Shown piece by piece: positions 4,343-45,364 of a stretch of DNA of 64,000 bases (positions are counted from its first letter, which is position 1; each line of letters starts with the position of its first letter). The notes under the pieces are model-generated. The model did not search any database and was not told the DNA's origin. It saw nothing but the letters and a program-made list of their open reading frames with translations. The stretch comes from Macrostomum lignano. Taxonomy: Eukaryota. A program made the position numbers and the translations under genes. The stretch lies in NCBI GenBank assembly GCA_002269645.1, contig NIVC01003001.1:1-64000 (forward strand), given 5' to 3'.

Positions 4343-7300
4343 CTGGACAGTAGGGCTGCGCTTTGTCCGGTCGCCAAGCCGCTGTGAAGTTCTGTTCAGA
4401 CAGACAGCTGAAAAAACTGAGCCAGAAGACACATTCTCCCGGCACACGAAGGCCACCTGGTCTCCGACGAGAAACGGACCGGCTGCAGCCACTGCCAATG
4501 TGGAGGCGTTCAGAGGACCGGCCAGCACGCTGGGATCGATTCCGGGACCGAAGTGGTCTTCTGAACAGGTGACCGGCTGGCAGTCCATGGATGCGCCGGC
4601 AGTCCACTGAGGGCCTGGATTGAAAAAATTAAATTGGTGGCTCCCATAGCTGCACTTCAGACTGTCACTATGTTACGCAGTCATCTCGCTGTAAACAAAC
4701 AATTTCTATGCAAAATGTTTTTATAAACAAAGTTTGAGGTCTTTTTTATCCAGGAAAAGCCTGAGGGAATTTCAGTGGTAAACATAATTTTATATATAAT
4801 CTTCCTGTAAACATATACGATTTATGATTTTAAAAACCTTTTTCGCATGCCGCCATCCGTGAGCTCGCGTACGCATCTACAAACCGGCTGTTGGGCCAGC
4901 ACCTCACTTCCACGGTGCTGTTCACTGGCAGGTACACCTGACCGTCTCCCGTAGTCACGTTTCCCAAGTTGTTGCTGGGCACGGCTGTAGATCGAGTCAG
5001 GTTGGTAGGCAACAGACAGGGCTTGGGCTGGCACAGAGTCTCCGATGTCGGCAGCAGCAGCTGGTTGAGCACCGTCCAGTCACCGGCGGTGCAGACCGCC
5101 TGTAGGAGGAACTGCGAGTCGCTCTGTAGACTGAAGTTCGCCGCCAGCGGAGCGAATGCGCTCGAAAGGCAGGTGACGTTGGCCACTCGGTCGGGATCCG
5201 TGTAGGAGCTGGTGGCGAAGTCGACCAGTCCGAATCCCACCAGCTGCGCTAAGAGACTGTTGTTGCAGTGCTCTAAAAAAGATTAGAAGATGGCTTGCTA
5301 TTGAAAAAGACGGCAGTTCAATAAAAAAATTGTATACCGGTATCTAGAACGAGGTTTCCCAGATTGGTGTGCATTCTTTTGCAAGCCACCACTCCAAGTT
5401 TCGGATTAGAAGCAATGATGACAAGCTGCTTACTGCGGCAGCTGAAGGCCACATTTGAGCCGACGCTGCGCCACACTGCCGCAGGCGGATCTCCGTCTGA
5501 CAGTCCGCACACGGCCAGCTCGCTGCTGCCCGGCATGGCAAAGTACGGCTCCTCGCAGCTCAGCCGCACCAAACTTGTGTAGGGCAGGTGCGAGCTGTTA
5601 GCAAAGTTGAACGATGCATTGATGACGGTCATGCGAGCGGCCTGAGGCTGCAGCACGACGGCATCCGGCTGTGAGCAGTTGAGCAGCTCGCACGGACCGG
5701 GAACGTCCGGCTCCCAGCGGTCTCCCAGCCTGCAGAAGATGCTCAACCGCCGGTTCTGCGTCGTCCGAACGAAGCCGGGCCGGCACTCGTAGCTGAGGCT
5801 GTCGTCGACCTGCACTCCGGAAGCCGGCAGACCCGTCTGCAGCTCCTGCTCGAGGTTCAGCGAGCTGTACAGGCTGGAGTTTCCCAGTCCCGGCGGCAGA
5901 CTCGAGCAGGCGGTCGGTCGGCAGTTCAGGTGGGTGAACGAGGTCCAGCTGCTGTTGATGCAGCTGATGACGAAGCTGACAGATCCGTTGGGCAGACCGC
6001 CGACGCTGTAGTTTGTGTTGCAGGTGAAGGCGAGGCTGGCGCCCTCCCAGGAGGTGTTTCCGAGGGTGGCGTTGGCCTGCGCGTTGGCCACGGTCGGAGG
6101 GACGGAGACGCCGCCGCAGTATCCGGGGCTGCAGTCCATGGTGACGGGGCTCCAGCTGCCGCCAGGCATGCAGGAGGCGGTCTGGCTGGAGCCTGTGAGA
6201 CCGGATTCACAGGAGATGTGGATTTCGTCCCCGGGTCGGAATGTTCCGTTCGATAAGAGGTGCGTCAGCAGCTGGCTGTCAGTGTAGTTGTATGTGACGC
6301 CCTTTGTGGTGAAGCTGGTGATAGTTGCGGTGTCATTCGGGTAGACGGGCATCTGGGTGCACGGCAGCGAGACGCATTGGGGCATTTCAATATCCCACAC
6401 GGCGTCCTGAGCGGCGGAATTATTGAGTCACTTGAGTTACTATTTTGATATATCAATAATTACGAATATGGATGTAAGAAAAATTTCAAAGATTTTTGCA
6501 AAGTTAATTTAAGGAGATTCCATTATGTCTGTTTTAAACATTTAGGGTTGTTTGTCATTAATTTAACATACGTGAATTAGAGTTATTCTCAGCTTAATCG
6601 AGCTGAACCTGTACCTGGGTGCATCGCCTCACAATGCTGCTGCCGTTTTTTTCAGAACCAGCGAACACAAAGTTCGGAGCGCAAGTGTATTCAATCTGGT
6701 GAAACGGCAGCTTCTTCAGCTGCAGCTCCGCAGCGGAGAGCGAACTGTTCCAGGAGGCGCAGACGAGATGCCTCTCCGTCAGCTGATTGTCAGTGTGCGG
6801 ACTGGGGCAGGTCATGGCTGAAGTGGAAATTAATTGTAAGTTAACTTGCTCATAAGTTTAATTTAAAGCTCTAGAGTAAGTTTGTCTATTTCAGAATAAA
6901 TACCCATAAAGTACATTTTTATTGGAAACAATAAATTCGTCTCCCCTTGCTCATGGTAGTTTTTGAGGATCTGAACCGATTGGATAATGCTTCAGAACTC
7001 AGATGACCCAAAATAAGCTGGAGTGACATTTTTGTTTCCTACTTTGGGGATGTTAGTATATTTTGGATTACACGTAGCAAGGGGTCAGTAGATTAAGTAT
7101 CAGAAGACGTTGTCCATCCTAATGCTCCCAGTAAGCGTATCGGCACGTAACTATGCAGTTCGAACAACGTTCCTTGGAAATTGGTTTTACACTGGTGACG
7201 TTGGGAGGGGCAACAAAAGGAATATTTATGATGAAGTTCATAATGCAAATGCCTTTCAAAGTTATAAAGCAGGGGTCGGCAAACTCCAGCCCACGAGGCC

Positions 7301-9126
7301 TCTCTAATCCGGCCCTCGGGTCCTTATAACTTCACAATGGCAATCCCGCCCGCTCAAGGTTGGCGTAGCTGTTCTATCTCCTCACTTCTCTCTTCTCTTC
7401 CCGTGGGCGAGGCACTTTGAATGTATTTTACTAGCGTTTGTTTTTGTTATTCGTTGTAACGCTCACTATATGTAAACCTTCCAGCAATAGAAAGATGGCT
7501 TTGGAAAAAGATGTGAAAATTTCTTTACAGAGAAGTGCTTCCAATCAAAGATGCTTACCTGTACAGAGTACACCCTCGTTGGAGTGGTAATTGCTTCTCT
7601 TAACCGCCTTGGGCAACGAGTCTTTCCAGATGTATCTCACGACAAGTCCCTTGCTCTTGTCTTGGCTAAGGATCTCTTTGCTGAGACTAGACCGGCAGGG
7701 GATCCCGGGAAGGCAGAAGGACTGACGTCTCCAGTTGGTCATGCCGGTGTCGAACATGAGCGCAAGCATCAGGTGGCCTCCGTTTAACACATAGGTTCCC
7801 GGAATGATTGAATCATTCAGAAATTTCCTAATCCCGAATGCAATGGGTACACGGTGAGGAGTCACAATGAGGCGTTTTAGCTAGTTTTAGCTAGCAGTAA
7901 GTTGATGGATTATCGAGGGCTGGTTTTGGGGTCTTTGTAAAGATCTCAAGTCTTTGGGTCTGGTCTTGTGTCTTTGCAAGGATGCAGAGATACTATCATA
8001 TGGTACTATATTAGACTATACTACCGTATGCTATGCTAGCTCGCATAAGGATTTATATACATTTCAAGACTACGCACAAAGATTCAACAGTCGAGCTTAG
8101 ATATCACAAAGAATGGGGAAAATTTTCCAAAAACTTCCTAAACTTTCTCTAACAGTGTAAACAAACCATAATTTATCTCGTTTCTCTAAGCTCTCCGCTT
8201 GCGCGGGACGGCCATTGCCGGCTTCGCAGAACAGCTCGTAGGCATCTTGCAGGTACTCGTCTTTAAACTTTAGCTTGGTGGAGTGGACGCAGAAGCTCTG
8301 ATTCACCAGCGGTCCTCCGTCCAAGCTAGCAACCAGGCTTGCTGGACTGCAGGCAATGTAAGGTTCTGCAGAGCCATTACCTGAAGATAGTAGCTTGCTT
8401 ATATAAAAGTGCTAGAAGGTGTCAAGTATTGAATTTTTTAACAGAATGCGACTCACGCTGAGGGAAATACTCGCAGACTGGATACAACTCGACGCTTGTG
8501 TCCACAGCTGTGTACAGAAACTTATTCTCGAATCGGTTTAAGGCTATCAGGTTAAACTTCGCGTCGACAGAGGAATTGTCCCACTGCCCAGCTGGCGGGG
8601 TGAAGGATGGACCGAACATGTTCCAGGCAAGGGGCACCGGGTCTCCTCCTGTGTAAAAATAAGGCTGATAGGTCCAATTAGTGCACAGGTCTTTGCCGTC
8701 TACGATGAGACTGAGTGTAACGCTGAAATTTTTGTTGCGGAATGTTTAAGCGAGCACTCTTTCATTTGGACTCATAGTTCAGAAGATGTAACTGTTGAAA
8801 GGTTTTGCAAGAATTTAATCAGCAAAGGCTCACTTTTCGGTAATCAGACTGTTGAATGCGTCGACGGCTCGAGTGTCGTTGAGAGGAGCGAATATGCTGT
8901 GGTTGTTCTCCTTCAGGGCCAAGCAGTCGGAGGCGAAAGTAGCGTACGGCAGGGACCTGTTGAACGTCGGCGGGTCGGCATCGGAAATCGGGTAGCGGAA
9001 GATGTACTCTGTGCCTTTGAAGTCGGGGATTTTGACGTAGTCCCACCGGTAGCCAAGGCAGACTTGGGAACCACAGTAGTGAGCCAGCCACCACAGTAGG
9101 TAATAAATAACAGCACTTGACATCAT
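4343..9126 (-). CDS. Secreted C-type-lectin-like + multi-Sushi/CCP protein, paralog 1 (1-nt frameshift in exon 8 as assembled)
   Basis: Exons 8834-9126, 8457-8722, 8167-8380, 7559-7827, 6615-6817, 5434-6406, 4838-5272, 4343-4614. All introns are GT..AG with compatible phases, and exon lengths match paralogs 2 and 3. Signal peptide MMSSAVIYYLLWW...; CCP motifs such as YTCAPNF..C..W, SCESG..C..W, YECRPGF..C..W. A possible terminal mini-exon lies at 4262-4290 (DKTGMVHLW*). Confidence 0.82.
7270..7320 (+). mobile_element. hAT (Buster/Charlie-like) DNA transposon terminal remnant
   Basis: CAGGGGTCGGCAAACT followed by CCAGCCCACGAGGCC...ATCCGGCCC, typical of hAT left ends. No partner end was found. 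Confidence 0.5.
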
Positions 9127-20700: not shown

Positions 20701-22364
20701 TACATTCACTCTAGTTGTTGAAATTTGAAAGCCAGTTGGGCCAAACAATTTTCTACTGGATGCAACTGTGGCAATTTTGTTGTTAATTGTTTTAAACATA
20801 TAGGTTTGCATATTATAACTGCTTTCAATTGCATGTTGGAATTCGTCAATGTTATTTGAGTTGAGCTCAATCTACACGTCAGAGTTTGGAGGGGCAGCCA
20901 CTCACCCAGTTTTCCTTGGTTAACGTCAAACCGACTGGCGCCTCCGACGAAGAATTTTGGATTTTTACAGATTTCCTGAAAATTGGGTCTGAATTGAGTG
21001 AGCTCATGCGTACTTGAGTATACGAGTGAGTGACTGAGTGACTGAGTTTACAAGTGAGTAAGTTCATTGGTGAGATCATGAGTGAGATCATGCGTGAGAT
21101 CATGAGTGAGATCATGATTGAGATCATGAGTGAGATAATGAGTGAGATAATGAGTGAGATCATGAGTGAGATCATGAGTGAGATCATGAGTGAGATCATG
21201 AGTGAGATCATGAGTGAGATCATGAGTAAGATCATGAGTAAGATCATGAGTGAGATCATGAGTGAGATCATGAGTGAGATAATGAGTGAGATAATGAGTG
21301 AGATCATGAGTGAGATCATGAGTGAGATCATGAGTAAGATCATGAGTGAGATCATGAGTGAGATAATGAGTGAGATCATGAGTGAGATCATGAGTGAGAT
21401 CATGAGTAAGATCATGAGTGAGATAATGAGTGAGATAATGAGTGAGATCATGAGTGAGATCATGAGTGAGATCAGATCATGATTGAGATCATGAGTAAGA
21501 TCATGAGTGGATCATGAGTGAGATCATGAGTGAAATAATGAGAGAGATCATGGGTAAGGTCATAAGCGAGATCAAGAGTGGGAGCACAAGTGTGCCTTTA
21601 TCGGTGATAATATCTTAGCGAGTTCACGAGTTCAGGAGAGGAAAGCTTGAATACTGGTATACTCAGTAACACAGAAAGTTTTCTTCCAGTCCATAAAAGT
21701 TAAAACTGAATTTAGCAAATGGGTGGCTTCTGATTCAATTTTGTTGACAGAACTAGATTTCTGTTATTTTTGCCGGGTATATTCTGTCTCATTTTATAAG
21801 CTAACTCTACTTCAGCCCAACAGCAAACACGTGATTTACAACTCTTAACTTCCAACCAGTCTCAGTAGCCTTGTGCATTCCCTGTACACGAAATCTACGG
21901 TTTCGCTCGCACCTGCTCTAAAAAGCTGTGTATGTACACTGATTGCCCTGAGTACACTTTAACCATGTGCCACAAGCACCACCACCCCATTTCTCTGATT
22001 GGTTATTAGCTAACAGACCGTATGTCAGCTGCTTATAAAAGTACATTCATCACTTTCAGTGTTGACTTACAGATTCGCCTTCAAATTTTCCAGAATTTCT
22101 ATTTGACGTATCAACTTTTTACGTTGTTAACAAAAACCTTCTTTATAAATTACGTCATTTATCAATCATAAAAACAGACATATAATAAAAGCTTACATGG
22201 GGCCGTTTCCATGCGTGGTTCACTTTGCGCGTGTAGTAGATGTTGGATGACTCGGCGGGAAAGTCCTGATCTTCGAACAGCTGATCCTTTGCCAGGAGCT
22301 CTGATTTTAGAGCAGTGATTTTGTCCTCGGTTACAATGCTGCTTCCCAACAGCTGCTCAGCCAT
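11733..22364 (-). CDS. Classical calpain (CysPc + C2-like domain III + penta-EF-hand), about 700 aa, 11 exons
   Basis: Exons 22197-22364, 20906-20975, 19391-19556, 17624-17996, 14123-14335, 13229-13590, 12869-13070, 12470-12605, 12185-12391, 11839-12017, 11733-11759, totalling 2103 nt with phases consistent. Motifs: FEDQDFPA, RFDVNQGKLGNCWFL (catalytic C), EFWSALLEKAYAKL, RHAYSVTG (H), RIRNPWG (N), NPQF, YVIVPST, DADQSGKLGFREF, DEDKSGNFNSYELR. The protein ends YLSAAAYV*. Confidence 0.95.
13672..13900 (-). mobile_element. 5'-truncated copy of the tRNA-derived SINE at 51687
   Basis: The reverse complement matches the body at 51770-52013 (AACAATTTGTGTCCTTG...GGGGTAATTGAGGGTGTGTGTGGCGACCCTCC...CATCTGCCCA) and ends in a (TTA)n tail. 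Confidence 0.8.
15166..17259. mobile_element. 2.1-kb TG..CA element with 4-bp TSD (solo LTR of Gypsy type, or non-autonomous element) in calpain intron 4
   Basis: Perfect 10-bp inverted termini TGATGTAACC (15166-15175) and GGTTACATCA (17250-17259), flanked by AGTG on both sides (15162-15165, 17260-17263). Inside are a CCAATCAG, a TATTTAA box and a CCG|GTAAGT donor on the plus strand. Confidence 0.75.
18262..18550. repeat. 21-bp minisatellite (GCGCCAAAATGAGTGCCTGTG)n in calpain intron 3
   Basis: Direct tandem repeats; the source of the RTRHSFW and ALILAHQ ORFs. Confidence 0.95.
19838..20395. repeat. 16-bp minisatellite (CTGGATTGGGAAGTAT/TTA)n in calpain intron 2
   Basis: Period 16, e.g. 20291 to 20307. 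All three plus frames stay open, giving 16-aa periodic ORFs. Confidence 0.95.
21068..21560. repeat. 12-bp minisatellite (GAGATCATGAGT)n in calpain intron 1
   Basis: Direct tandem repeats; the source of the MSEI and MISL ORFs. Confidence 0.95.
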
Positions 22365-24413: not shown

Positions 24414-27400
24414 ATGATGCAGCCACAGTACTTTAACTACCTGCTGTGGTCGCTTCTCATTGGCTGCCTCGGCTCATTTTGTTTCGGCTACAGGTGGGAC
24501 TACGTCAAGGTGCCGAACTACAAAGGCAGCGAGTACATCTTCCGTTACCCACTGAATAGCTACAACAATTTCCACGACTCAGAGTCATACACCACCTTCG
24601 CAGCAGACTGTCTATCACTGACGGAAAACACGCATCCGATTTTCGCCCCGCTCAACGACACAAGAGCAGTGGACGCCTTCACAAAATTGTTCGCAGAAAA
24701 GTGAGTCAACTTGGCTGATCTGATTCAAAACTCTAGAACGCATTGATATCAATGCTGATATCAAACGTGTGTAACATCAACACAGCGAGCTGCTTACAAA
24801 CATGTGCACTCGTAGAGTCATAAAAATTTGCGTAGCTACCTTGCATTTCAGCGCCACGCTGATGAACATACTAAAGGGTAGGCGGCTCTGCACCAACTGG
24901 ACCTACCAGCCCTATCACTACACCGGAGGAGCCCCGGTGCCCTTGGCCTGGAACATGTTTGGGCCGAGTTTCACACCGCCAGCATCCCTGTGGGACAGCG
25001 CTTTAGTCGACGATAGGTGTAACTTAATTGCGCTAAAGCGAGCCTCGAATATGTTTCAGTACATCGCTGTGGATGTCAACACTGATATGTACCCAGTGTG
25101 CGAGTACTTTCCGCTGCGTAAGTTTTTAGTTCCTTTTTGCTTAATCAGTGGATTCTGTATCGATTGGGTCATCATAGGCCGCGACAATTTCTTTATTTTT
25201 AGTAATCCGGATGATTTGAATTGGCCTTTACGAAAGAAGATAGATAGAAAACTATAAATTGTGACGTCTATACATATTTTACGAGAATGCGACTTCACAC
25301 TTTATTAAGGGAATAAAAACCGTCCCCTTTCCCCTAGTGTCATTCCAGCCTAGTGTCAGTACAGTCGAGTGTCATTGCAGCCTAGTGTCATTGCAGCCTC
25401 AGTGTCAGTACAGTCTAGTGTCAGTACAGCCTAGTGTCAGTACAGTCGAGTGTCAGTACAGTCTAGTGTCAGTACAGTCGAGTGTCAGTACAGTCTAGTG
25501 TCAGTTCAGTCTAGTGTCAGTACAGTCGAGTGTCAAAATGTCTATACATGTACAAAGTAATTTCCTCACCCCGTCCCCCTACCTCGCAGCAAACGCCTCG
25601 GCAATGGCCGGCTTTGCGTGCAGCCAAGCGAGCCTGGTTGCTACAGTGGACGGGGGCCCATCGGTAAATCAGAGCTACTGCGTTCACTCCACTCAGTTGC
25701 AGCCTGATAACGATTACAAGTACGACAACTACCGTCTGTTCTGCGAGAAAGGCGATGGACGGCCCGCTCAGGCGGAGAGCAGTGAGAAGAGAAGCAAGTT
25801 ATGGTGAGAAAGTGTTTTTCAAACAGCAAGACATTTCTAGTATTCCTAGCAACGAATCGAACATATGAAGTAGTACACGCAGTTACATACGATCCGTAAA
25901 ATATGACTTAAAGATGACTTCTAAGAAGCAGATGTCTACCCAAACATCCAGCTCATTAAATATTACACTTAAAATTTCGGCCAGGAAATTTCTTAATGAC
26001 TCAATTCTACCCGGATCCAACGTGCAAAACGGAAAATACCTGATGCTGGCTCTCATGTTCGACACGGGAATGACAAACTGGAGGCATCAGTCCTTCTGTT
26101 TGCCTGGGACTCCGTGTCGGTCCAGCATCAACAGAGATATTCTTTCACAGTCTAAAACAAAAGGAGGCATTGTGTATTACAGCTGGGAAGGCAATGGGCC
26201 GAGAGAAGTTCGCATAGTAGAATATAACAATGATTGCGCCGTGTTGTGCACAGGTTAGTTGACGACTCAATTGACATACTCTTACAGACTTATGCAATGC
26301 CAGCTGAGTATTGCATCAGTCTGTAAGTCTGTCAGCTAAGCTAAAGTTGATTAGCTGAATCAACTTCATACTTCAGCCATGACCTGCCCCAGTCCGCACA
26401 CTGACGACCAGCTGACGGAGAGGCATCTCGTCTGCGCCTCCTGGAACAGTTCGCTCTCCGCTGCGGAGCTGCAGCTGAAGAAGCTGCCGTTTCACCACAT
26501 TGAATACACTTGCGCTCCCAACTTTGTGTTCGTCGGTGCCGAGCAAAATAGCAGCATTGTGAGGCGATGCACTCAGGTAAAACAGACGGTGACGTTTACT
26601 ACATTCAGGTAACAAGTTACATAAGTATTTCACGCGCCAATGCTGTACACAAGCGCTATATATCCTGTAACTTAATAGGAGAAAAGTGGAAAAAGATCAA
26701 AACTTGTGCATAGTCAAATGAGTTTCCATTATTTTACTGAACATAAGGCTGAACTAATTTTGTTGCATGTGATTCAACAGGATGCCGTTTGGGACAGCGA
26801 AATTCCGACCTGCGTCTCGCTGCCGTGCACCCAGATGCCCGTCTATCCGAATGACACAGCAACCATCACCAGCTTCACAACGAAGGGCGTCACCTACAAC
26901 TACACTGATAGCCAGCTGCTGACGCACCTCTTGTCGAACGGAACATTCCGACCCGGAGACGAAATCCACATCTCCTGTGAATCCGGTCTCACAGGCTCCA
27001 GCCAGACCGCCTCCTGCATGCCTGGCGGCAGCTGGAGCCCCGTCACCATGGACTGCAGCCCCGGATACTGTGGCGGCATTTCCGTCCCTCCGACGGTGGC
27101 CAACTCGCAGACCAACGCCACCCTCGGAAACACCTCCTGGGAGGGCGCCAGCCTCGCCTTCACCTGCAACACAAACTACAGCGTCAGCGGCCTGCCCAAC
27201 GGATCTGTCAGCTTCGTCATCAGCTGCATCAACAGCAGCTGGACCTCGTTCACCCACCTGAACTGCCGACCGACCGCCTGCTCGAGTCTGCCACCGGGAC
27301 TGGGAAACTCCAGCCTGTACAGCTCGCTGAACCTCGAGCAGGAGCTGCAGACGGGTCTGCCGGCTTCCGGAGTGCAGGTCGACGACAGCCTCAGCTACGA

Positions 27401-28914
27401 GTGTCGGCCCGGCTTCGTTCGGACGACGCAGAACCGGCGATTGAGCATCTTCTGCAGGCTGGGAGACCGCTGGGAGCCGGACGTTCCCGGTCCGTGCCAG
27501 CTGCTCAACTGCTCACAGCCGGATGCCATCGTGCTGCAGCCTCAGGCCGCTCGCATGACCGTCATCAATGCATCGTTCAACTTTGCTAACAGCTCGCACC
27601 TGCCCTACACAAGTTTGGTGCGGCTGAGCTGCGAAGAGCCGTACTTTGCCATGCCGGGCAGCAGCGAGCTGGCCGTGTGCGGACTGTCAGACGGAGATCC
27701 GCCTGCGGCAGTGTGGCGCAGCGTCGGCTCAAATGTGGCCTTCAGCTGCCGCAGTAAGCAACTTGTCATTATTGCTTCTAATCCGAAACTTGGAGTGGTG
27801 GCTTGCAAAAGAATGTACACCAATCTGGGCAATTTAGTTATAGATACCGGTATATAAATTTTGTATTGAACTGCCGTCTTTCTCAACAGAAAGCCATCTC
27901 CGAACCTCTCGCAGAGCACTGCAACAACAGTCTCTTGGCTCAGCTTGTCGGATTCGGACTGGTCGACTTCCCCACCAGCTCCTACACGGATCCCGACCGA
28001 GTGGCCAACATCACCTGTTTTTCGAGCGCCTTCGCTCCGCTGGCGGCGAACGTCAGTCTACAGAGCGACTCGCAGTTCCTCCTACAGGCGGTCTGCACCG
28101 CCGGTGACTGGACGGTGCTCAACCAGCTGCTGCTGCCGACATCGGAGACTCTGTGCCAGCCGAAGCCCTGTATGTTGCCTACCAACCTGACTCGATCTTC
28201 AGCCGTGCCCAGCAACAACCTGGGAACCGTGACTACGGGAGACGGTCAGGTGTACCTGCCAGTGAACAGCAGCGTGGAAGTGAGGTGCTGGCCCAACTGC
28301 CGTTTTGTGGACGCGTACGCCAGCTCCCGGACGGCTACATGTGATATAGGTCTGTCTTGAGCGTTTCACGACATCAATTAGTTTTTCGTAGATCTTGCAG
28401 TTTACGTCAAGGTGCACATTAGGAGAATAACGAAAAACTTGGCAGTCAGTCAGTCAGCCAGAGAAGGATTTGTCATTAAATTGTATTTTGTTTATGCCTT
28501 GGCAGATCCGTACATAGATTGTACCAGAATGCTACCGGTTTCGATCAGCGCCTTATAAAGATTCCTAGATGCTCAACTGAAAATTATGCTAAAGAATGCT
28601 AGTGCAGGCATCAGCATACCGCCATTCAATCTTGCCAGGCCCTCAGTGGAGCATCGGCGGCTCCATGAACTGCCAGCCGGTCGTCTGTCCTGACCGAGAC
28701 TTCGGTCCCGGGATCGAATCCAGCGTTCTGGTTGGTCCTCTGAACGCCTCCACTCCGGCGGAGACTGCGACAAGGCCGTTCCTTATCGGAGACCAGGTGG
28801 CCTTCACGTGCCGGGAGAACGCCTCTTCTTCTGGCTTAGTTTTGCTCAACTGCACCGCTGAGCCGAACTTCACAGCCGTCTGGCGACCAAACTTTGAACA
28901 GCCCTACTGCGCAG
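24414..28914 (+). CDS. Secreted C-type-lectin-like + multi-Sushi/CCP protein, paralog 2 (intact frame, at least 973 aa; terminal exon not identified)
   Basis: Exons 24414-24700, 24852-25117, 25590-25803, 25985-26253, 26377-26576, 26781-27753, 27915-28349, 28639-28914. All introns are GT..AG and the frame is open throughout. Signal peptide MMQPQYFNYLLWSLLIGCLGSFCFG; lectin-like ends YPVCEY and CAVLC; about 8 CCP modules. Confidence 0.88.
25332..25535. repeat. ~16-bp minisatellite (CTAGTGTCAGTACAGT)n in intron 2 of paralog 2
   Basis: Tandem AGTGTCA-containing units. Confidence 0.9.
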
Positions 28915-29637
28915 GTGAGCACTTTACTATGAGTTCAATGGGGATTTTTTTCGGGGCCACTGGTGGTAAAAAGATCGAAAAAATTGAAGAATCGCTCTTC
29001 AGTAGCGAGATAGGGTTTTTTATTCCTAACGTCAACTTTTAAGGTTACGTTAAGGTGAACCACTTTCTACATAGTGGCTACGATTTCTTTTGTCACCACT
29101 GGTCCTTGGGTGATTTACCTGTGGCTTTTTTGTTTTTCCGAGGTGGAGTTTTGGAGTTTTGGATTGGGTAAGTTTAGCAGAGTAAGTACCGAACTCACCC
29201 CTCGTACCATTCAGCAAATGCTTTGAATAGCTCCGTTGATGCTGCAGGCAGCCAATATGCTTATTTATGATATTTTCAATTTTTTGTTACAGTTGGTTGA
29301 GTCTGTTTTTTCTTAGAAATGTTCCTTGTTTCGTTTGAATATCAGACGTGATTTATCTTTTTTCAATTTCTAATAATACTCGAAAGGCAAGCTTGTACTT
29401 TCCACTCAATTCAGGTTTTGTCATTATTTCAATGGTTTTTTCTAGAATTGTTTAATCAACCTACTTATTAGTAGCATAGTTGCGCAATGGTTGCATGGTG
29501 TTTCAGAATTATAATGAACGCTTAAATTTGTCTTGACTTCGTGCATTTAAAAAATAGACGTAACGAAGCAGCAGTAAAATGCAATCTATCGAGCGATACT
29601 TCCCAGAAAGTCTTAATCACTTTACATGGGTGAACCC

Positions 29638-29720
29638 ACTGACTGACTGACTGACTGTGACTGTGACTGTGAATGATGGGGTGAATGAGGTGAGGTGAGG
29701 TGAGGTGAGGTGAGGTGAGG
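29638..29720. repeat. Compound microsatellite (CTGA)n / (CTGTGA)n / (GTGAG)n
   Basis: Visible simple repeats between the convergent paralogs 2 and 3. Confidence 0.8.
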
Positions 29721-30362
29721 CAACGGAGGCGTGAATGAGCTGAACCGAGAAGACGGATGGTGTCAATTGCTCACTAGCATTGCTGAAGCGGAACTCCACG
29801 CATTTTGAGCGCATGCAGCCGAAGAATCAATATGCTCGCGAACCGTGGGGAATTAGGAGAAATTGCGAGACTCCTGTCTTCACAGGTGAATGCTTAACTA
29901 TGCACACAAGGCAGTCTAACAGTTCAAAAAAAATGATCAGGAAAACACACTAGTATCCTCAGATGCGTAAATGCTTTAAGTATTTGGCTCAAATGTACTT
30001 CTAAAAGATGTTTTATTTATATTTGATACTTAGTTAGCAAAGACACAAATAAATAACTAGGTGGTAAGATTCACTGAAAGTAATAACAGTCTCTTTTAAA
30101 CGATATTGACAGGAAGACTGTTAAAATCTTTAATTACTTTTCAGGAAATAAGTCAGCCTGATTTATAGTCAGAACTACTGTCCTTTGTTTAACGTGAGAG
30201 GCACAGATGTCCATTTGATGTCTGCCCAAGTCTAATAACGTCTAGCTCGTATCTTTAGCAAAAAGGGCAACTCTCTCCAACTTACCAATGAAAACTTACC
30301 ATATCTGGCAGTGTGCCAAGCCGCTAAATTTCATTCAGGCCTCCATAAAAGAAGAGACTTAC

Positions 30363-33300
30363 CAGTGCAATACGGTCGGGTAGCATTCGACTGCCAGACG
30401 GCTGTGAAGTTCGGCCCAGCGGTGCAGTTGAGCAGCACTGAGCCCGGAGAAGACGCATTCTCCCGGCACACGAAGGACACCTGGTCTCCGATGAAGAACG
30501 GCCCGGTTGCCGTCTCGGCCAGGGTGGAAGCGTTTAGAGGACCGGCCAGCACGCTGGGATCGATCCCGTGACCGAAGTGGCTGTCCGGACAGACGACCAA
30601 CTGGCAGTTCATAGAGCCGCCGGCGCTCCACTGGGGGCCTGGATTTAAAAATGAAAGTGTTGGCTCACGTAGCCGAATTTCAGTTTGTCAAGACTGGGAT
30701 AACCCAGACACGGAAATCGCGGGTAGTTATATTGTATACCTGCAACTCTCGTCATAAACTAGGAGCCTTCACAACCATAAAAATTTGAAGGACTTTTAGC
30801 AGTAGAGCATCAAACTTCATCGTCTGAGCACACGTACGCGTTGATAAAACAAAGTAGCTCATAATTAAACGAAAAATCCTACACCTATTATTAGCAACAT
30901 GCCCAACTCGAAGCTTAAGAATGAATGCGAATTATCAGTCAGGGAACTTACCTAGAACACAAGTAGCCGTCCGAGAGCTCGCGTACGCGTCCACAAAGCG
31001 GCTGTTGGGCCAGCACCTCACTTCCACGGTGCTGTTCACTGGCAGGTACACCTGACCGTCTCCCGTAGTCACGTTTCCCAGGTTGTTGCTGGGAACGGCT
31101 GTAGATCGAGTCAGGTTGGTAGGCAACAGACAGGGCTTCGGCTGGCACAGAGTCTCCGATGTCGGCAGCAGCAGCTGGTTGAGCACCGTCCAGTCTCCGG
31201 CCGTGCAGACAGCCTGTAGGAAGAACTGCGAGTCGCTCTGTAGACTGACGTTCGCCGCCAGCGGAGCGAAGGCGCTCAAAAGGCAGGTGACGTTGGCGAC
31301 TCGGTCGGGATCCGTGTAGGAGCTGGTGGGGAAGTCGACCAGTCCGACTCCGACCAGCTGCGCCAAGAGACTGTTGTTGCAGTGCTCTACAAGAGGTTCG
31401 GAGATGGCTTTCTGTTGAAAAAGATTGTAGTTCATTGATGTGGCGGTCCACTGCCGCCAACTTATTAACATAATGCGGACTGCAGAGCTTTGCCTAAATG
31501 CCTCCCTTACTGTTATACCTATGGCCCAAATAGACGCTCAAGTTAAGAAGCCAGGCCGAACTTGAGGCCTGGCAAGCGGACTTTCTTTACTCGCTCGCAC
31601 AGCCTAAGGCGAGCCGCTACATTGAATAATTATATACCGGTATCTATAACTAGATTGCCCAGAGTGGTGTACATTCTTTTGCAAGCCACCACTCCAAGTT
31701 TCGGATTAGAAGCAATAATGACAAGTTGCTTACTGCGGCAGCTGAAGGCCACATTTGAGCCGACGCTGCGCCACACTGCCGCAGGCGGATCTCCGTCTGA
31801 CAGTCCGCACACGGCCAGCTCGCTGCTGTCCGGCATGGCAAAGTACGGCTCCTCGCAGCTCAGCCGCACCAAACTTGTGTAGGGCAGGTGCGAGCTGTTA
31901 GCAAAGTTGAACGATGCATTGATGACGGTCATGCGAGCGGCCTGAGGCTGCAGCACGATGGCATCCGGCTGTGAGCAGTTGAGCAGCTGGCACGGACCGG
32001 GAACGTCCGGCTCCCAGCGGTCTCCCAGCCTGCAGAAGATGCTCAATCGCCGGTTCTGCGTCGTCCGAACGAAGCCGGGCCGACACTCGTAGCTGAGGCT
32101 GTCGTCGACCTGCACTCCGGAAGCCGGCAGACCCGTCTGCAGCTCCTGCTCGAGGTTCAGCGAGCTGTACAGGCTGGAGTTTCCCAGTCCCGGTGGCAGA
32201 CTCGAGCAGGCGGTCGGTCGGCAGTTCAGGTGGGTGAACGAGGTCCAGCTGCTGTTGATGCAGCTGATGACGAAGCTGACAGATCCGTTGGGCAGGCCGC
32301 TGACGCTGTAGTTTGTGTTGCAGGTGAAGGCGAGGCTGGCGCCCTCCCAGGAGGTGTTTCCGAGGGTGGCGTTGGTCTGCGAGTTGGCCACCGTCGGAGG
32401 GACGGAAATGCCGCCACAGTATCCGGGGCTGCAGTCCATGGTGACGGGGCTCCAGCTGCCGCCAGGCATGCAGGAGGCGGTCTGGCTGGAGCCTGTGAGA
32501 CCGGATTCACAGGAGATGTGGATTTCGTCTCCGGGTCGGAATGTTCCGTTCGACAAGAGGTGCGGCAGCAGCTGGCTGTCAGTGTAGTTGTAGGTGACGC
32601 CCTTCGTTGTGAAGCTGGTGATGGTTGCTGTGTCATTCGGATAGACGGGCATCTGGGTGCACGGCAGCGAGACGCAGGTCGGAATTTCGCTGTCCCAAAC
32701 GGCATCCTGTTGAATCACATGCAACAAAATTAGTTCAGCCTTATGTTCAGTAAAATAATGGAAACTCATTTGACTATGCACAAGTTTTGATCTTTTTCCA
32801 CTTTTCTCCTATTAAGTTACAGGATATATAGCGCTTGTGTACAGCATTGGCGCGTGAAATACTTATGTAACTTGTTACCTGAATGTAGTAAACGTCACCG
32901 TCTGTTTTACCTGAGTGCATCGCCTCACAATGCTGCTATTTTGCTCGGCACCGACGAACACAAAGTTGGGAGCGCAAGTGTATTCAATGTGGTGAAACGG
33001 CAGCTTCTTCAGCTGCAGCTCCGCAGCGGAGAGCGAACTGTTCCAGGAGGCGCAGACGAGATGCCTCTCCGTCAGCTGGTCGTCAGTGTGCGGACTGGGG
33101 CAGGTCATGGCTGAAGTGAAGTGGAAATTATGGCTTAAGATAACTTTTTTGGATTATGCTTTGATTTGTAAACAACCAACTCTGTTGATTACTAATCATG
33201 AGAGACTTGAATTTTATTAATGTATTATAACGTGTACATGTAGCATGGGTAACATCCCAAAATCCCAATATCGGAAAAGGCCTATTGCACGTCAAGCTTT

Positions 33301-36300
33301 ATTTGCTGTCCCCCAAGAAAATAGCGTAATGTAGGACAGGCATAAAATATTATACTGCATTAAACTAGATTATTAAGAGCCAGAATAGTGGTTCCGACCT
33401 GCACATAGGACAGCCACTTGTTCGTCAAATTCCTTGTCCTTGATTTCTTTTGGATCACCATTGTCCCATTTTGAAATCACTATCAGTCCTTTCTCCTTAT
33501 CGTGATCAAGGATGTCTTTGTTGAGACTGGACCGGCACGGAATTCTCGGCAAGCAGAAGGACTGATGCCTCCAGTTGGTCATGCCAGTGTCGAACATTAG
33601 CGCCAACATCAGGTGGTCTCCTTCGTTCACAGATTGGCTTTGCAGGATAGAGTTGTTCAGGAACTCCCTAAATGAATTAAAATCGATTTGCTAAAATTGT
33701 TAGCAGTTTCAATCAGAGGCCTAGAATTTGAATGTTTGATCGGAATCACCTGTGTGGAATGTTTTGACTCGATTTTTTGACGAGACTTCCACCAAAACGT
33801 TATAAGAAATGGAAGAGACAGAAAAGTCAGAAAAGAGAATTTGAGCGACAGAAAGAGCTGTCGTTTGGCGTGAGGTTTTTTGTGATAAAAATGATGAGGT
33901 AAAATAAGATAAAAGTACACCAAGAATCCAAAGGTATGAATAGAAACACACCACATCTTTTGTCGTTTCTCTGCACTCTCAGCTTGAGCAGGCCGACCAG
34001 TCCGATTCTCGCAGAACAAGTTATATTTGTCTTTTTCGTACTCGTCATCCAGTTTCAGCTTTTGAAAATGAACGCAATAGCTTTGATTCACCAGCGGCCC
34101 TTCGTCAATGCTGGCAACCAATGTGACCGGGCTGCAGGTGCTGCTTCCAGTTGAGCTGTTGGCTGCAAAATTTTTTTGAATAATCAGATTTTAACTCTTG
34201 TGTAGCTAAACAGAACAGTATGGCAGAAATAGGAAACTGACTTCAGGTAAAAGTATCAGCCGCCTACATTAAATGAGATTGGTCTGTTAATATCATTCTC
34301 TATCCTCCATCCCTATCACCATATTCGATCATTTGCAGTAGTTCTGTCACCCTCACTACGATAGCTTTGTCACCCTCACTGGGGTAGCTTTGTCACCCCC
34401 ACTGCGGTAGCTTTGTCACCCTCATTGCAGTAGCTTTGTCACCCCCACTGCGGTAGCTTTGTCACCCCCACTGCGGTAGCTTTGTCACCCTCATTGCGGT
34501 AGCTTTGTCACCCCCACTGCGGTAGCTTTGTCACCCCATTGCAGTAGCTTTGTCACCCCCACTGCAGTAGCTTTATCAACCTCATTGCAGTAGCTTTGTC
34601 ACCCCCATTGCAGTAGCTTTGTCAACCTCATTGCAGTAGCTCTGTCATCCCCATTGCAGTAGCTCTGTCACCCCCATTGCAGTAGCTTTGTCACCCCCAT
34701 TGCAGTAGCTCTGTCAACACCATTTCAGTAGCTCTGTCATCCCCATTGCAGTAGCTTTGTCAACACCATTTCAGTAGCTTTCGCGCTCTAGGAATTATTT
34801 TCTACTCATTGAATAATTAAGCAACTTGAGAATAAGCGGCTACTCACGCAGCGGAAAGTACTCGCACATCGGGTACATGTGCACATCGGTAGACACGGCC
34901 GTGTACATAAACGAATTCTGAGTTCGCTTCAATGCGATCAGATTGATTTTTTTAGTAACGGATTTTTTATCCCACTGCCAAGCTGGCGGGGTGAAAGTCG
35001 GTCCGAACATGTTCCAGGCCAGGGGCACCGGGTCTCTCAGAATAGTAATAGGGCTTGTAGGTCCAGTTGGTTGCCAGCTCTTCGTCGTCCACAATTATTC
35101 TGACTGTGGCGCTGTTGCAGTTTCGTATGAATTAAAAGTATATAAAGATATTGATTTGGTGTAATAATTGAAAAAATCTTCTAAAAAAGTCTTCTAAAAA
35201 ATCCAAACTAACAGGGATTGATCGGTCGGTTTCGTTCAGGAATACGACGGAGACTTCTACTGTCAGCATATAAAAACGACCACTTTTGATAAGCTTTCCC
35301 GAGGCAACTAATATTTTTTGATGAGAAGTAGCTTGATTGATATTTTTGTTAGTTATAGATTGTAGCTCGTAGTACGATTGTGTTGGTTGTTGGTAGTTGT
35401 CATCGATTTTTGGCTCTCCGTTCAGACTCCAATAGACGCAAATTGAAGTAACACCATATGGTGCGTTTTAACGACTTTTTAATCACTCAGGAGCCTGGGA
35501 AGCTCGCAAAATCTTGGTGAAAAAAGTATGAGGCTCGTTCAAAAGCACTGTCTATGGCCAAGCCTTATACAAATAATTAAGAACTGAATCAGTTAACCAT
35601 TTTTCCGACCATCAAATGCAAGTGTGAATTGACCAAGGACCACTAGAAGTCAATACAGTAACAGGAGATTAAATAATATTTTAGAAATCAAGACATCAGA
35701 GAATATCCAGAGAATATCTATGGTTGCTTCATCAAAGGGCTTTTAGCACTGCAAGCATCTTTCAGTGAGGAAAACTCACTGATAATAGGAAGATAGATTA
35801 TGGATATTATTATAGATTTATCTAGATATTCTCTGGGCGACACGTAATGCAAGTTTTAGTACGAGCTTATATGGAGTTTGTACGAAGTATAAGGCTTGGC
35901 CATAGACGATGAGTTAAAACGAGCATCGTTACTTTTTTCACCATTATTTGCGTGTTTCCCATCGACCTGAGTGGTCTAGTCTGGACTTAGTCTATGGTAA
36001 AAAGCTGTGGCTTACAACTCTCACTTACTTCTCAGCCAATAGTTTGGTGAACGCGTCGAGCGCTCTGGTGTCGTTGAGCGGTGCGTAGATCTTGTGACCT
36101 TCCTCCGTCAAGTTAAAACAGTCAGAGGCAAAAGTCGTATATCGCAGGTCGGTGTACAAGCTGGAGCCGTCGATCGGGTAGCGGAAGATGTACTCAGTGC
36201 CCCTGAAGTTCGGCATCTTGACGTAATCCCACCGGTAGCCAAGGTAGACCGGACCGTGGCAGCAGCAGCACACGAGCCACCAAAGCAGGAATCGAGCAGA

Positions 36301-36315
36301 AATCTTAGAAGTCAT
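30363..36315 (-). CDS. Secreted C-type-lectin-like + multi-Sushi/CCP protein, paralog 3 (2-nt deletion in exon 2 as assembled; possible pseudogene or assembly error)
   Basis: Exons 36029-36315, 34848-35111, 33952-34162, 33399-33667, 32911-33110, 31734-32706, 30952-31386, 30363-30638. All introns are GT..AG. Exon 2 is 264 nt against 266 nt in both paralogs; the other exons are intact. Confidence 0.78.
31439..31621. mobile_element. 183-bp TGT..ACA insertion with 4-bp TSD (small solo-LTR-like element) in intron 6 of paralog 3
   Basis: Termini TGTGGCGG and CCGCTACA, with TTGA duplicated at 31435-31438 and 31622-31625. It is absent from the 161-nt equivalent intron of paralogs 1 and 2; this intron is 347 nt. 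Confidence 0.8.
34338..34780. repeat. 22-23-bp minisatellite (GTAGCTTTGTCACCCCCACTGCG)n in intron 2 of paralog 3
   Basis: Period 23, e.g. 34451 to 34474. Confidence 0.95.
35497..35965. mobile_element. MITE-like element with ~75-bp imperfect inverted arms
   Basis: GGTGAAAAAAGTA..GCTCGTT..GTCTATGGCCAAGCCTTATAC (to 35570) is mirrored by GTATAAGGCTTGGCCATAGAC..AACGAGC..TACTTTTTTCACC (from 35887). Confidence 0.6.
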
Positions 36316-41482: not shown

Positions 41483-43103
41483 TTGATAAGCTAATAATAT
41501 AGCTTTTTGCAAGCCATTTGATACTACGAGCAAGCAATTAATTATTCAGTGGGGAAAGCCAGTGTTAAAATATAGATTTCTCAGTACTCTATAGCTCAAA
41601 CCATGGGCTTTGGAGCAACCAATTGAATAACCCGAGCACCATTTAGTCATTTCCAGTGTTACTTGTGTCGCATTGGCTGCAAATAGACGCACACATTCAA
41701 CATGGTAGAAAACGAGGAATCCAGCGAGCTTTTGGAAGAAGTCGGAGGAAGCTTTGTCACTGCTGATGAAGCGCTAGAAGAGCAAGATCATGCAGCACCG
41801 TGGCTCCACTGTTGACGCTAAAAAGTTTGCGAAACACTGGTCTTGAGTGGTCTTGAGTGAAGCCACAATAAGCAAAAGCCTAGACTAGCATGGTTGATCA
41901 CTTTGAAGTACCTGGGAAGAGATGCGGACATGCCGGCGGTTCGGAACTCGCCAGAAAACATAGCATGGAGGCAGGAATTCGGGGCTTCTTAAACTTTAGG
42001 TTAGATAAAATAGTTACAGTTTTGTTAGTCTTAATTTTGTCTCATAGGGATTTTTGATGGTGCTGATTTCAAATTTGAGCTTCATTTTTTCGTAGCTTAA
42101 AGCCAACCACTGGGGCATGGGGAATGGGGGGTTTATGGTGGGGAGAATCTTCATGGGAATTGATTTTTTGTACCTAAACTTCAATAGAGGAACGGGGGTC
42201 TATTGAAGATTAGGTTAAAAATTCAGCAAGTTATCAAACACCTCCATGGAGAAAAAATAGAATCCTATCAAAACTAATTGATATCAGCAGCTGTAGTTAC
42301 CTTCAGAATGAAGACAACGCAGATTAGTATAAATTACGAGCTTAGTATAGGTAAACAAATAATGAATGTACGGTTAGTAGTCACAACGATGAGAGAACGA
42401 CAGCGAATCAAAAAGCGGGAGTGATGGGGGCGGGTGGCGAACAAACAAATTGAGCTTGCGTTACCTCTGAAAGTACTCGTATTTTTTGCATTTTTTTGCT
42501 TTATTATCACTTGGACACTTTTTAAGACTGGCGAAAGTTTCAGAAATATCGGAAAATCGGAAGTATTTTACGTACCTAAAGTTCAAGAGTCCGGAAGTCG
42601 CCCATTGGCTGACTGATTTGACCCCAGAATGTCATCTGATCTGTGTTGATGAAAACCATCCAGGAAGTTTCACCGGATCTTGGCCTGGTTCTCCATAAGA
42701 TCGTGAGCCAGATACGTACTGATGCGCGAGATCGTACTGACTGCCGACCTATTCCAGGTGTTTATCGAGGAGTTGCTCAACTCGGTCAATAATCCAAAGG
42801 CGTCGGCAAGGCGCTTCATTTCACTGATCCGCTTTGTTAATTTTCTGCCCTATCAGTTGTCGGTTCAGTTGTTGTATTCTGTTTTGTTTCTCAAGCTGCT
42901 TGAGCGTTGTCTCCCCAAATGCAGTGTTTATATTGACTATTAGGGTGCTCAGATTATTAAATTGGTTGCTCCAAAGCCCATGCTTTGGACCATAGAGTAC
43001 TGAGAAACCTCTCTTTTAGCACTGGGTTTCCCCACTGATTATTAAATTGCTTGCTCATAATATCAAATGGCTTGCAAGAAGCTATATTTCATGATTAATC
43101 AAA
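41483..43103. repeat. Pair of ~155-bp inverted repeats 1.3 kb apart (TIR-element-like)
   Basis: 41483-41640 (ATATAGCTTTTTGCAAGCCATTTGATA...CATGGGCTTTGGAGCAACCAATT..GAGCACC) is the reverse complement of 42944-43103. Confidence 0.75.
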
Positions 43104-45147: not shown

Positions 45148-45364
45148 NNNNNNNNNNNNNNNNNNNNNNNNNNNNNNNNNNNNNNNNNNNNNNNNNNNNN
45201 NNNNNNNNNNNNNNNNNNNNNNNNNNNNNNNNNNNNNNNNNNNNNNNNNNNNNNNNNNNNNNNNNNNNNNNNNNNNNNNNNNNNNNNNNNNNNNNNNNNN
45301 NNNNNNNNNNNNNNNNNNNNNNNNNNNNNNNNNNNNNNNNNNNNNNNNNNNNNNNNNNNNNNNN
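45148..45364. other. Assembly gap (217 N)
   Basis: Run of N. Confidence 1.

What the first reader, a model, noticed from the sequence alone, without database searches (positions are those of the whole stretch)
26377..33110. Mosaic gene conversion across a large inverted repeat formed by paralogs 2 and 3
From the first base of exon 5 through intron 5 (204 nt in both), exon 6 and the start of intron 6, copies 2 and 3 are almost identical. Intron 4 just upstream is unrelated (123 vs 288 nt). Exon 7 of copy 3 then switches to resemble copy 1 (ANVTCL, STAVPSNNLGNV, STVEV, NSRF), as does the 3' end of intron 7, and exon 8 is a patchwork. Segment-specific relationships with a sharp edge at the head/stalk boundary indicate recurrent conversion that spares the heads. 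The ~1.5-kb near-perfect inverted arms separated by about 3.7 kb could promote it.
Basis: partly seen in the sequence, partly recalled or inferred. Interest (0 to 1): 0.72.

Follow-up and report, generated by a model that had tools for sequence, protein, structure and literature searches.

The report
Gene conversion between convergent flatworm paralogs
Two tail-to-tail copies of a flatworm-specific secreted protein gene have recently copied 1.5 kb of their "stalk" onto one another while their "head" exons stay very different; this is a clean but ordinary case of gene conversion between neighbouring duplicates.

Summary
Three paralogs, most likely from Macrostomum lignano, encode an orphan two-domain head (exons 1-4) and eight Sushi/CCP-like modules (exons 5-8). 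They lie at 9126-4343(-), 24414-28914(+) and 36315-30363(-).

Copies 2 and 3 are convergent. They share a 1,498-nt inverted block, 26360-27857 and 33125-31630, at 99.4% identity. The block covers exon 5, all 204 nt of intron 5, exon 6 and the first ~104 nt of intron 6.

Head exons are only 62-70% identical, with synonymous divergence (dS) above 1. Across exons 5-6, dS between copies 2 and 3 is 0-0.009. A permutation test gives p<=1e-4.

Both edges of the tract sit where homology ends. The 5' edge is the unalignable intron 4. The 3' edge is a 186-nt insertion private to intron 6 of copy 3.

Older layers of homogenisation are also visible. Copy 1 differs by ~1% in the 3' part of exon 6. All pairs differ by ~6% in exon 7. 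Exon 8 has dS of about 0.5-0.65.

The claimed switch of copy 3's exon 7 towards copy 1 is not supported: those sites are private changes in copy 2. With three sequences, the exon 7 and exon 8 "patchwork" cannot be told apart from independent substitutions.

As assembled, copy 3 carries a frameshift in exon 2.

Verdict: a new example of a known process, of modest interest.

The parts
24414..28914 (+). Paralog 2, exons 1-8. Exons: 24414-24700, 24852-25117, 25590-25803, 25985-26253, 26377-26576, 26781-27753, 27915-28349, 28639-28914. Reading frame open throughout.
   Evidence: Read from the sequence. Frames, GT-AG introns and open CDS checked. The exon 6/7 junction agrees with the UniProt model A0A1I8HDW6.
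30363..36315 (-). Paralog 3, exons 1-8, convergent with paralog 2. Exons: 36315-36029, 35111-34848, 34162-33952, 33667-33399, 33110-32911, 32706-31734, 31386-30952, 30638-30363. A 2-nt gap in exon 2 causes a premature stop at residue 143.
4343..9126 (-). Paralog 1, exons 1-8. Exons: 9126-8834, 8722-8457, 8380-8167, 7827-7559, 6817-6615, 6406-5434, 5272-4838, 4614-4343. The frame is open, but the end of exon 8 is shifted by 1 nt relative to copies 2 and 3.
26360..27857 (+). Copy 2 arm of the recent conversion tract: the last 17 nt of intron 4, exon 5, intron 5, exon 6 and the first 104 nt of intron 6.
   Evidence: 99.4% identical to 33125-31630; inverted pair I2; permutation p<=1e-4.
31630..33125 (-). 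Copy 3 arm of the recent conversion tract.
31435..31629 (-). Stretch of intron 6 in copy 3 that holds a net 186-nt insertion absent from copies 1 and 2. The near-identity between copies 2 and 3 stops here.
   Evidence: Alignment; blastn high-scoring segment ends; no other copy in the window.
27867..28351 (+). Older homogenised block in copy 2 (end of intron 6 plus exon 7). It is 93.8% identical to copy 3 at 31434-30950 and is part of a gap-free 1,574-nt, 94.8% match to copy 1 at 6409-4836.
   Evidence: dS 0.12-0.18.
5434..5986 (-). 3' 553 nt of exon 6 in copy 1. It differs from copy 2 at only 6 sites (1.1%), against 27 sites in the first 420 nt. This points to a second, intermediate-age tract involving copy 1.
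   Evidence: Fisher p=6e-6.
28915..30362 (.). Unique 1,448-nt spacer between the 3' ends of copies 2 and 3. It has no internal inverted symmetry and no conserved ninth exon.

Best explanation
Three old tandem paralogs encode a lineage-restricted secreted protein: a signal peptide, two orphan ~160-aa head domains and eight Sushi/CCP-like modules. Their middle part is kept alike by repeated interlocus gene conversion.

The most recent event was an intrachromosomal, arm-to-arm exchange between the convergent copies 2 and 3. It replaced about 1.5 kb in one copy with the other's sequence, from the exon 5 acceptor to position ~104 of intron 6.

Inferred: the heteroduplex or synthesis tract could extend only as far as the two copies were still alignable. 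On the 5' side it stopped at intron 4, where the sequences are unrelated. On the 3' side it stopped at a 186-nt insertion in intron 6 of copy 3.

Earlier events homogenised exons 5-7 among all three copies and, judging from protein sequences, among copies elsewhere in the genome.

The heads and exon 8 have diverged too far to act as recombination substrates (identical runs of 29 nt or less). They have therefore escaped concerted evolution. This produces a sharp head/stalk contrast without any need for selection against conversion in the heads.

Shown: the identity pattern, its statistical significance, that it includes synonymous and intronic sites, and that the tract edges coincide with loss of homology. 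Inferred: the molecular mechanism, the barrier role of the heterologies, the direction of transfer and the timing.
For: - Inverted arms at 99.4% identity.
- Intron 5 identical in copies 2 and 3 at 204/204 positions, while introns 1-4 and 7 cannot be aligned.
- dS between copies 2 and 3 is 0-0.009 in exons 5-6, against more than 1 in exons 1-4. Purifying selection on the protein therefore cannot explain the similarity.
- The GENECONV-like permutation gives p<=1e-4 for copies 2-3 only; Fisher p=4e-13 for the arm against exon 7.
- Relative distances reverse. Copies 2 and 3 are the most distant pair in exons 2-4 and second most distant in exon 1, but the closest pair in the stalk.
- Divergence levels are nested. 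Copy 1 differs from copy 2 by 1.1% in the last 553 nt of exon 6 and 6.4% in the first 420 nt (27 of 420 sites; p=6e-6). Exon 7 has dS 0.12-0.18 and exon 8 has dS 0.49-0.65.
- Every high-identity block ends at an indel or at unalignable intron.
- Longest identical runs are 13-23 nt in the heads, 20-29 nt in exon 8, and 66-712 nt in exons 5-7.
- Proteins from other M. lignano loci show the same conserved core: A0A1I8HDW6 is 81% identical over the first 95 residues of exon 6, 97% over the next 229, 92-95% in exon 7 and ~70% in exon 8. Among five family members, informative sites are mutually incompatible.
- The arm divergence of 0.47% is below the 1.1-2.2% reported between M. lignano homeologous copies (PMC10733133), which suggests a recent event.
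Against: - There are no reads, no second assembly and no orthologous locus. Non-reciprocity, direction and the reality of the assembly could not be checked.
- With three sequences, topological incongruence cannot be tested. The case rests on branch lengths and on synonymous and intronic identity.
- GC3 is higher in exon 6 (0.81) than in the heads (0.48-0.74), as GC-biased conversion would predict. But the converted intron 5 is only 35% GC, and the polarity of the differences is not significant (and my own count from the exon 6 site list).
- Intron 5 of copy 1 is unrelated to that of copies 2 and 3, although the flanking exons are 94-97% identical. This needs either two separate tracts or a later replacement of that intron.
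Confidence: 0.85

Rival explanations
1. Assembly or polishing artefact. Reads from two similar paralogs were mixed during consensus building or short-read polishing, which made a moderately diverged block look nearly identical.
For: M. lignano is a neopolyploid whose assemblies are reported as error-prone for paralogous regions (PMC10733133). The window contains a scaffold gap at 45148-45364. The window also contains two frame-breaking indels in otherwise intact genes, which could be consensus errors. An artefact of this kind would also stop at the edges of homology.
Against: Seven scattered mismatches remain in the block. The adjoining exon 7, at 94% identity, was not homogenised although it would be just as prone to mis-mapping. 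Intron 5 is identical over 204 nt, whereas the same intron in copy 1 is unrelated, and polishing cannot create homology. The arms are embedded in unique, well-differentiated flanks and a unique spacer.
Confidence: 0.07
2. No conversion. The stalk is simply under much stronger purifying selection, on the protein or on the mRNA, than the heads, and the copies are equally old along their whole length.
For: The stalk core is nearly invariant at protein level in five family members. The dN/dS ratio is low everywhere, 0.1-0.3.
Against: Synonymous divergence drops from above 1 to 0-0.18. Intron 5 (204/204) and the start of intron 6 are identical or nearly identical in copies 2 and 3. Intron 6 is 87% identical between copies 1 and 2, while the other introns cannot be aligned. 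Divergence changes abruptly at indel boundaries, not at domain boundaries.
Confidence: 0.03
3. Chimeric origin. Copy 3 (or copy 2) was built recently by non-homologous fusion of an old head with a freshly duplicated, inverted stalk segment, rather than by homology-driven conversion.
For: The 5' edge lies within about 17 nt of an exon boundary. Copy 3 looks like a pseudogene as assembled.
Against: Exons 7 and 8 downstream of the block are homologous in all copies but at graded, older divergence. The block therefore replaced a pre-existing homologous segment in place, without changing exon phases or lengths. That is the definition of conversion.
Confidence: 0.05

Closest known systems
Arm-to-arm gene conversion in inverted repeats and palindromes, e.g. 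human Y-chromosome palindrome P6 (PMC3723533) and primate X palindromes (PMC8327919, PMC8981503)
   Same: Inverted arms above 99% identity, a unique spacer, and intrachromosomal non-reciprocal exchange. Crossovers between the arms would invert the spacer rather than delete it.
   Different: The arms here are only 1.5 kb, and they are an internal piece of two old, otherwise diverged genes rather than a large young duplication. GC bias is not demonstrated. The locus's chromosomal location, sex-linked or not, is unknown.
Conversion between oppositely oriented paralogs RHD and RHCE (PMC4824203; the tail-to-tail arrangement and hybrid alleles are recalled from my own knowledge)
   Same: Neighbouring paralogs in opposite orientation that exchange exon-scale segments, giving mosaic genes.
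   Different: RH genes are alike along their whole length. Here only the middle third is still exchangeable, and the ends have escaped.
Partial concerted evolution, or 'escape from conversion', in multigene families: homogenised framework with diverged recognition parts (general population-genetic models and immune-receptor examples, from my own knowledge)
   Same: A sharp contrast between a homogenised module and diverged modules in the same genes. The boundaries are set by loss of homology.
   Different: There is no evidence here that the heads are under diversifying selection; dN/dS is 0.1-0.3. The head fold and any ligand are unknown.

Membership tests
Interlocus (ectopic) gene conversion between paralogs | A segment with significantly lower divergence than its flanks, beyond what site shuffling gives | tested here: met
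   Run of 28 concordant variable sites, p<=1e-4; 7/1498 against 30/485 differences, p=4e-13.
Interlocus (ectopic) gene conversion between paralogs | The similarity extends to synonymous and intronic sites, so it is not due to protein-level constraint | tested here: met
   dS 0-0.009 against more than 1; intron 5 identical at 204/204 positions.
Interlocus (ectopic) gene conversion between paralogs | Relationships among the copies differ between segments | tested here: met
   Copies 2 and 3 are the least similar pair in exons 2-4 and the most similar in exons 5-8. Among five proteins, informative sites are incompatible. A topology test at the DNA level is impossible with three copies.
Interlocus (ectopic) gene conversion between paralogs | Non-reciprocal transfer with an identifiable donor and recipient | not testable with these tools
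   It needs orthologous or homeologous loci or population data. No M. lignano DNA outside the window could be fetched.
Palindrome-type arm-to-arm conversion | Inverted arms above 99% identity around a non-duplicated spacer | tested here: met
   99.4% over 1,498 nt with 3,762 nt between the arms. The innermost 1,448 nt are unique.
Palindrome-type arm-to-arm conversion | GC-biased outcome of conversion | tested here: inconclusive
   GC3 is 0.81 in exon 6 against 0.48-0.74 in the heads, but intron 5 is only 35% GC.
Sushi/CCP (SCR) repeat proteins | Pfam PF00084 matches above the gathering score | tested here: met
   Modules 1-4 score 21-27 bits against a cut-off of 20.7, and exon 6 as a whole has E=2e-15. 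Modules 5-8 show only the Cys/Trp spacing by eye.
C-type lectin-like head (selectin-like architecture) | Detectable similarity of the head to Lectin_C or to any solved fold | tested here: not met
   No Pfam hit even at E<=10. Profile searches of the PDB gave only chance-level hits. The AlphaFold2 model has pLDDT 35. My first impression of a lectin-like motif stays an untested lead.
Unprocessed pseudogene (copy 3) | A frame-disrupting lesion in an otherwise conserved exon | tested here: inconclusive
   A 2-nt gap relative to copies 1 and 2 and to two UniProt heads gives a stop at residue 143. A consensus error cannot be excluded, and everything else in the gene is intact.

The most novel reading that the evidence does not exclude
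The 1.5-kb arms might act as a recombination switch. Crossovers within them would invert the 3.76-kb segment between the arms and so swap exons 7-8 (CCP modules 6-8 and the C-termini) between two different heads. Together with a possibly frameshifted copy 3 serving as a silent donor, this would be a small cassette system that reshuffles a lineage-specific secreted receptor family.
Probability: 0.04. Interest if true: 0.6.

Novelty: new member of a known kind. Interest (0 to 1): 0.3.

Why it matters
- The locus shows that conversion tracts end where homology ends. A single intronic insertion and one diverged intron define the tract, so a 'domain-specific' pattern can arise without domain-specific selection.
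- It flags a Macrostomum-restricted gene family (orphan double head plus CCP stalk) whose members cannot be treated as independent loci in phylogenies, dN/dS scans or read mapping.
- In a neopolyploid genome with three homeologous sets, such exchange also complicates the assignment of subgenomes.
- It does not open a new mechanistic question.

Tried and rejected
1. Fetching genomic DNA for the two related UniProt stalk proteins. Neither is on record in the contig collection, so no fourth or fifth DNA copy could be used for trees or for polarising changes.

2. Handing spliced head proteins to the exhaustive protein search and to structure prediction. 

3. Identifying the head.
- Pfam found nothing at E<=10.
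- PDB profile searches gave only chance hits.
- A profile-profile comparison of head domain A against domain B showed no relation.
- The exhaustive search with exon 2 found one true relative, also from M. lignano, plus two low-complexity hits.
- A head-only search found two M. lignano proteins.
- AlphaFold2 on A0A1I8HEB2, with the other head protein and exon-wise window rows, gave pLDDT 35. I therefore ran no fold search.

4. Looking for a conserved ninth exon or for symmetry in the spacer. None was found.

5. Testing for clustering of the odd-one-out sites in exons 7 and 8. Not significant.

6. Considering conversion through a cDNA template to explain why similarity between copy 1 and copy 2 follows exon limits around intron 5. 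I rejected this because the introns are retained and intron 6 is itself homogenised.

7. Rfam scan of the window: no hits.
Full report
**What is there**

The window is eukaryotic. The only close database proteins are from the flatworm Macrostomum lignano, so the window most likely comes from that species or a very near relative.

tblastn with exon translations finds exactly three paralogs:
- Copy 1 on the minus strand, 9126-4343.
- Copy 2 on the plus strand, 24414-28914.
- Copy 3 on the minus strand, 36315-30363.

Copies 2 and 3 are tail to tail, with 1,448 nt of unique DNA between their last recognisable exons. I derived eight-exon models by reading the sequence. All introns are GT-AG and exon lengths are nearly the same in the three copies. 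The exon 6/7 junction I chose (…SCR|K|HCNN…) is the one used in UniProt model A0A1I8HDW6.

Exons 1-4 encode a signal peptide and two ~160-residue cysteine-containing head domains. Exons 5-8 encode eight Sushi/CCP-like modules. Four of them pass Pfam's threshold.

**The observation**

The repeat finder reports inverted arms 26370-27862 and 31625-33117: 1,493 nt, 99% complementary, 3,762 nt apart. blastn extends this to 26360-27857 against 33125-31630: 99.4% identity, 7 mismatches, and one 2-nt gap in the last bases of intron 4.

- Exon 5 starts at 26377 and at 33110.
- Intron 4 is 123 nt against 288 nt and cannot be aligned.
- Intron 5 is 204 nt in both copies and identical.
- Exon 6 differs at 4 of 973 sites.

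**Is it more than constraint or chance?**

Head exons are 62-70% identical in every pair, and their introns cannot be aligned. Nei-Gojobori estimates are:

| Region | Comparison | dS |
|---|---|---|
| Exons 1-4 | all pairs | >1 (saturated); dN 0.23-0.36 |
| Exons 5-6 | copy 2 vs copy 3 | 0-0.009 |
| Exons 5-6 | copy 1 vs copies 2/3 | 0.09-0.18 |
| Exon 7 | all pairs | 0.12-0.18 |
| Exon 8 | all pairs | 0.49-0.65 |

Synonymous and intronic sites share the pattern, so protein-level constraint cannot be the cause.

A GENECONV-like permutation of variable sites gives a run of 28 sites concordant between copies 2 and 3. The maximum over 10,000 shuffles was 12 (p<=1e-4). The other two pairs are not significant. 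Seven differences in 1,498 nt against 30 in the next 485 nt gives p=4e-13.

Relative distances also reverse. Copies 2 and 3 are the least similar pair in exons 2-4 and the most similar in exons 5-8.

**Layers**

Divergence between copy 1 and copy 2 is not uniform:
- 27 differences in the first 420 nt of exon 6, against 6 in the last 553 nt (p=6e-6).
- About 9-15 differences per 100 nt across intron 6.
- 2-5 per 100 nt in the body of exon 7, rising to 12 in the final 74 nt.

There are therefore at least three time depths inside the stalk: 0.5%, about 1%, and 3-10%. Exon 8 and the heads are older still. This supports recurrent exchange.

Two M. lignano proteins from other loci show the same conserved core. 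A0A1I8HDW6 is 81% identical over the first 95 residues of exon 6, 97% over the next 229, 92-95% in exon 7 and ~70% in exon 8. Parsimony-informative residues among the five sequences are mutually incompatible, for example {copy 1, HDW6} against {copy 1, JBY5} within exon 6.

**Edges**

Every high-identity block ends where alignable sequence ends:
- The copy 2-copy 3 tract starts within 17 nt of the exon 5 acceptor. Upstream of that, the introns are unrelated.
- The tract stops at a net 186-nt insertion found only in intron 6 of copy 3 (31435-31629).
- Beyond the insertion, similarity resumes but at 94%.
- The copy 1-copy 2 match is a gap-free 1,574-nt block bounded by two unrelated introns, intron 5 and intron 7.

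Uninterrupted identical runs are 13-23 nt in the heads and 20-29 nt in exon 8. In exons 5-7 they are 66-712 nt.

My inference is that heterology, not selection, sets the boundaries. Parts that have diverged too far can no longer be converted and keep diverging.

**What did not hold**

At all of these (V32I, L86M, T95S, N104T, T119S, S128C), copies 1 and 3 and both external proteins share the same state. These are therefore private changes on the copy 2 branch: 4 synonymous and 7 non-synonymous.

At the nucleotide level the three pairs are 93.6, 93.6 and 94.5% identical in exon 7.

With three sequences there is only one unrooted tree, so per-segment trees cannot disagree in topology. Runs tests for clustering of the odd copy are not significant in exon 7 (p=0.37) or exon 8 (p=0.14).

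The resemblance between copies 1 and 3 in the last ~50 nt of intron 7 and the last ~30 nt of intron 4 is real.

**State of the genes**

Copies 1 and 2 are open through exon 8.

Copy 3 lacks 2 nt in exon 2, between 35038 and 35037, relative to copies 1 and 2 and to two database heads. This gives a stop at residue 143. The rest of the gene is open.

Since the last exchange, exon 6 of copy 2 gained two synonymous changes and exon 6 of copy 3 gained two non-synonymous ones. This fits relaxed constraint on copy 3, but the numbers are tiny.

Copy 1 is 1 nt short near the end of exon 8, and its tail is read in the same alternative frame as A0A1I8JBY5. Either lesion could be a consensus error.

**Timing**

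The arm divergence of 0.47% is below the 1.1% (coding sequence) to 2.2% (genome-wide) SNP divergence reported between homeologous copies in M. lignano (PMC10733133). This suggests an exchange younger than the genome duplication. It is an inference that assumes similar rates.

**Head identity**

The head could not be assigned to any fold:
- No Pfam family, even at E<=10.
- No solved structure by profile search.
- No relation between the two head domains.
- Only M. lignano relatives among 1.84 billion representative proteins.
- An unusable AlphaFold2 model, pLDDT 35.

The UniProt names of the head proteins ('Conjugal transfer protein', 'GON domain-containing protein') have no support in these searches. 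The head is best called an orphan, lineage-restricted domain pair.

**Comparison and verdict**

Mechanistically this matches two known cases:
- Arm-to-arm conversion in inverted repeats such as Y and X palindromes (PMC3723533, PMC8327919).
- Exchange between oppositely oriented paralogs such as RHD and RHCE (PMC4824203).

It is combined with partial escape from concerted evolution. It differs in scale (1.5-kb arms inside old genes) and in the clarity with which single heterologies bound the tract.

The finding is genuine and statistically solid, but it is a new example of a well-known process. The main uncertainty is the assembly, which I could not test.

Noticed in passing
window 35030-35045 (copy 3 exon 2): A 2-nt gap relative to copies 1 and 2 and to two UniProt heads. 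It causes a frameshift and a stop at residue 143. Copy 3 is otherwise fully open with canonical splice sites, so this is either a very young pseudogene or a consensus error.
   Followed up: partly
window 4343-4430 (copy 1 exon 8, 3' end): Exon 8 is 1 nt short (plus a 3-nt deletion). The last ~18 codons are read in an alternative frame that stays open, and UniProt A0A1I8JBY5 reads the same alternative frame at the same place.
   Followed up: partly
window 31435-31629: A net 186-nt insertion private to intron 6 of copy 3, flanked by a short TCAATG-like repeat. There is no other copy in the window. It could be a small mobile element.
   Followed up: partly
window 6407-6614 versus 26577-26780: Intron 5 of copy 1 (208 nt) is unrelated to intron 5 of copies 2 and 3 (204 nt), although the exons on both sides are 94-97% identical. 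The intron read-through in A0A1I8HDW6 looks more like the copy 2/3 type.
   Followed up: partly
window 25334-25535 and 34333-34781: Intron 2 of copy 2 and intron 2 of copy 3 each hold a minisatellite (16-nt and 23-nt units). The two are unrelated to one another.
   Followed up: no
window 28915-28945, 30333-30362, 4313-4342: All three copies keep a good GT donor directly after exon 8, but no conserved downstream exon was found. The true 3' ends of the genes are unknown.
   Followed up: partly
window 17609-18052 (-) and 56574-57035 (-): Neighbouring gene fragments: a calpain catalytic-domain exon (Peptidase_C2, E=6e-30) and a GNAT acetyltransferase (E=6e-11).
   Followed up: partly
window 2027-2238, 18249-18553, 19839-20388, 21055-21580, 48551-49450, 57275-59185: Many long minisatellite arrays (units of 12-41 nt, up to ~1.9 kb). 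The array at 21055-21580 lies in a 2-kb bin (20001-22000) with a GC skew of 0.32.
   Followed up: no
window 45148-45364: A run of 217 N, which is a scaffold gap. It lies outside the three paralogs.
   Followed up: no
window 50172-50435 and 41496-43088: Two further inverted repeats: 108-nt arms at 95% with a 48-nt loop (hairpin or MITE-like), and 145-nt arms at 88% that are 1.3 kb apart.
   Followed up: no
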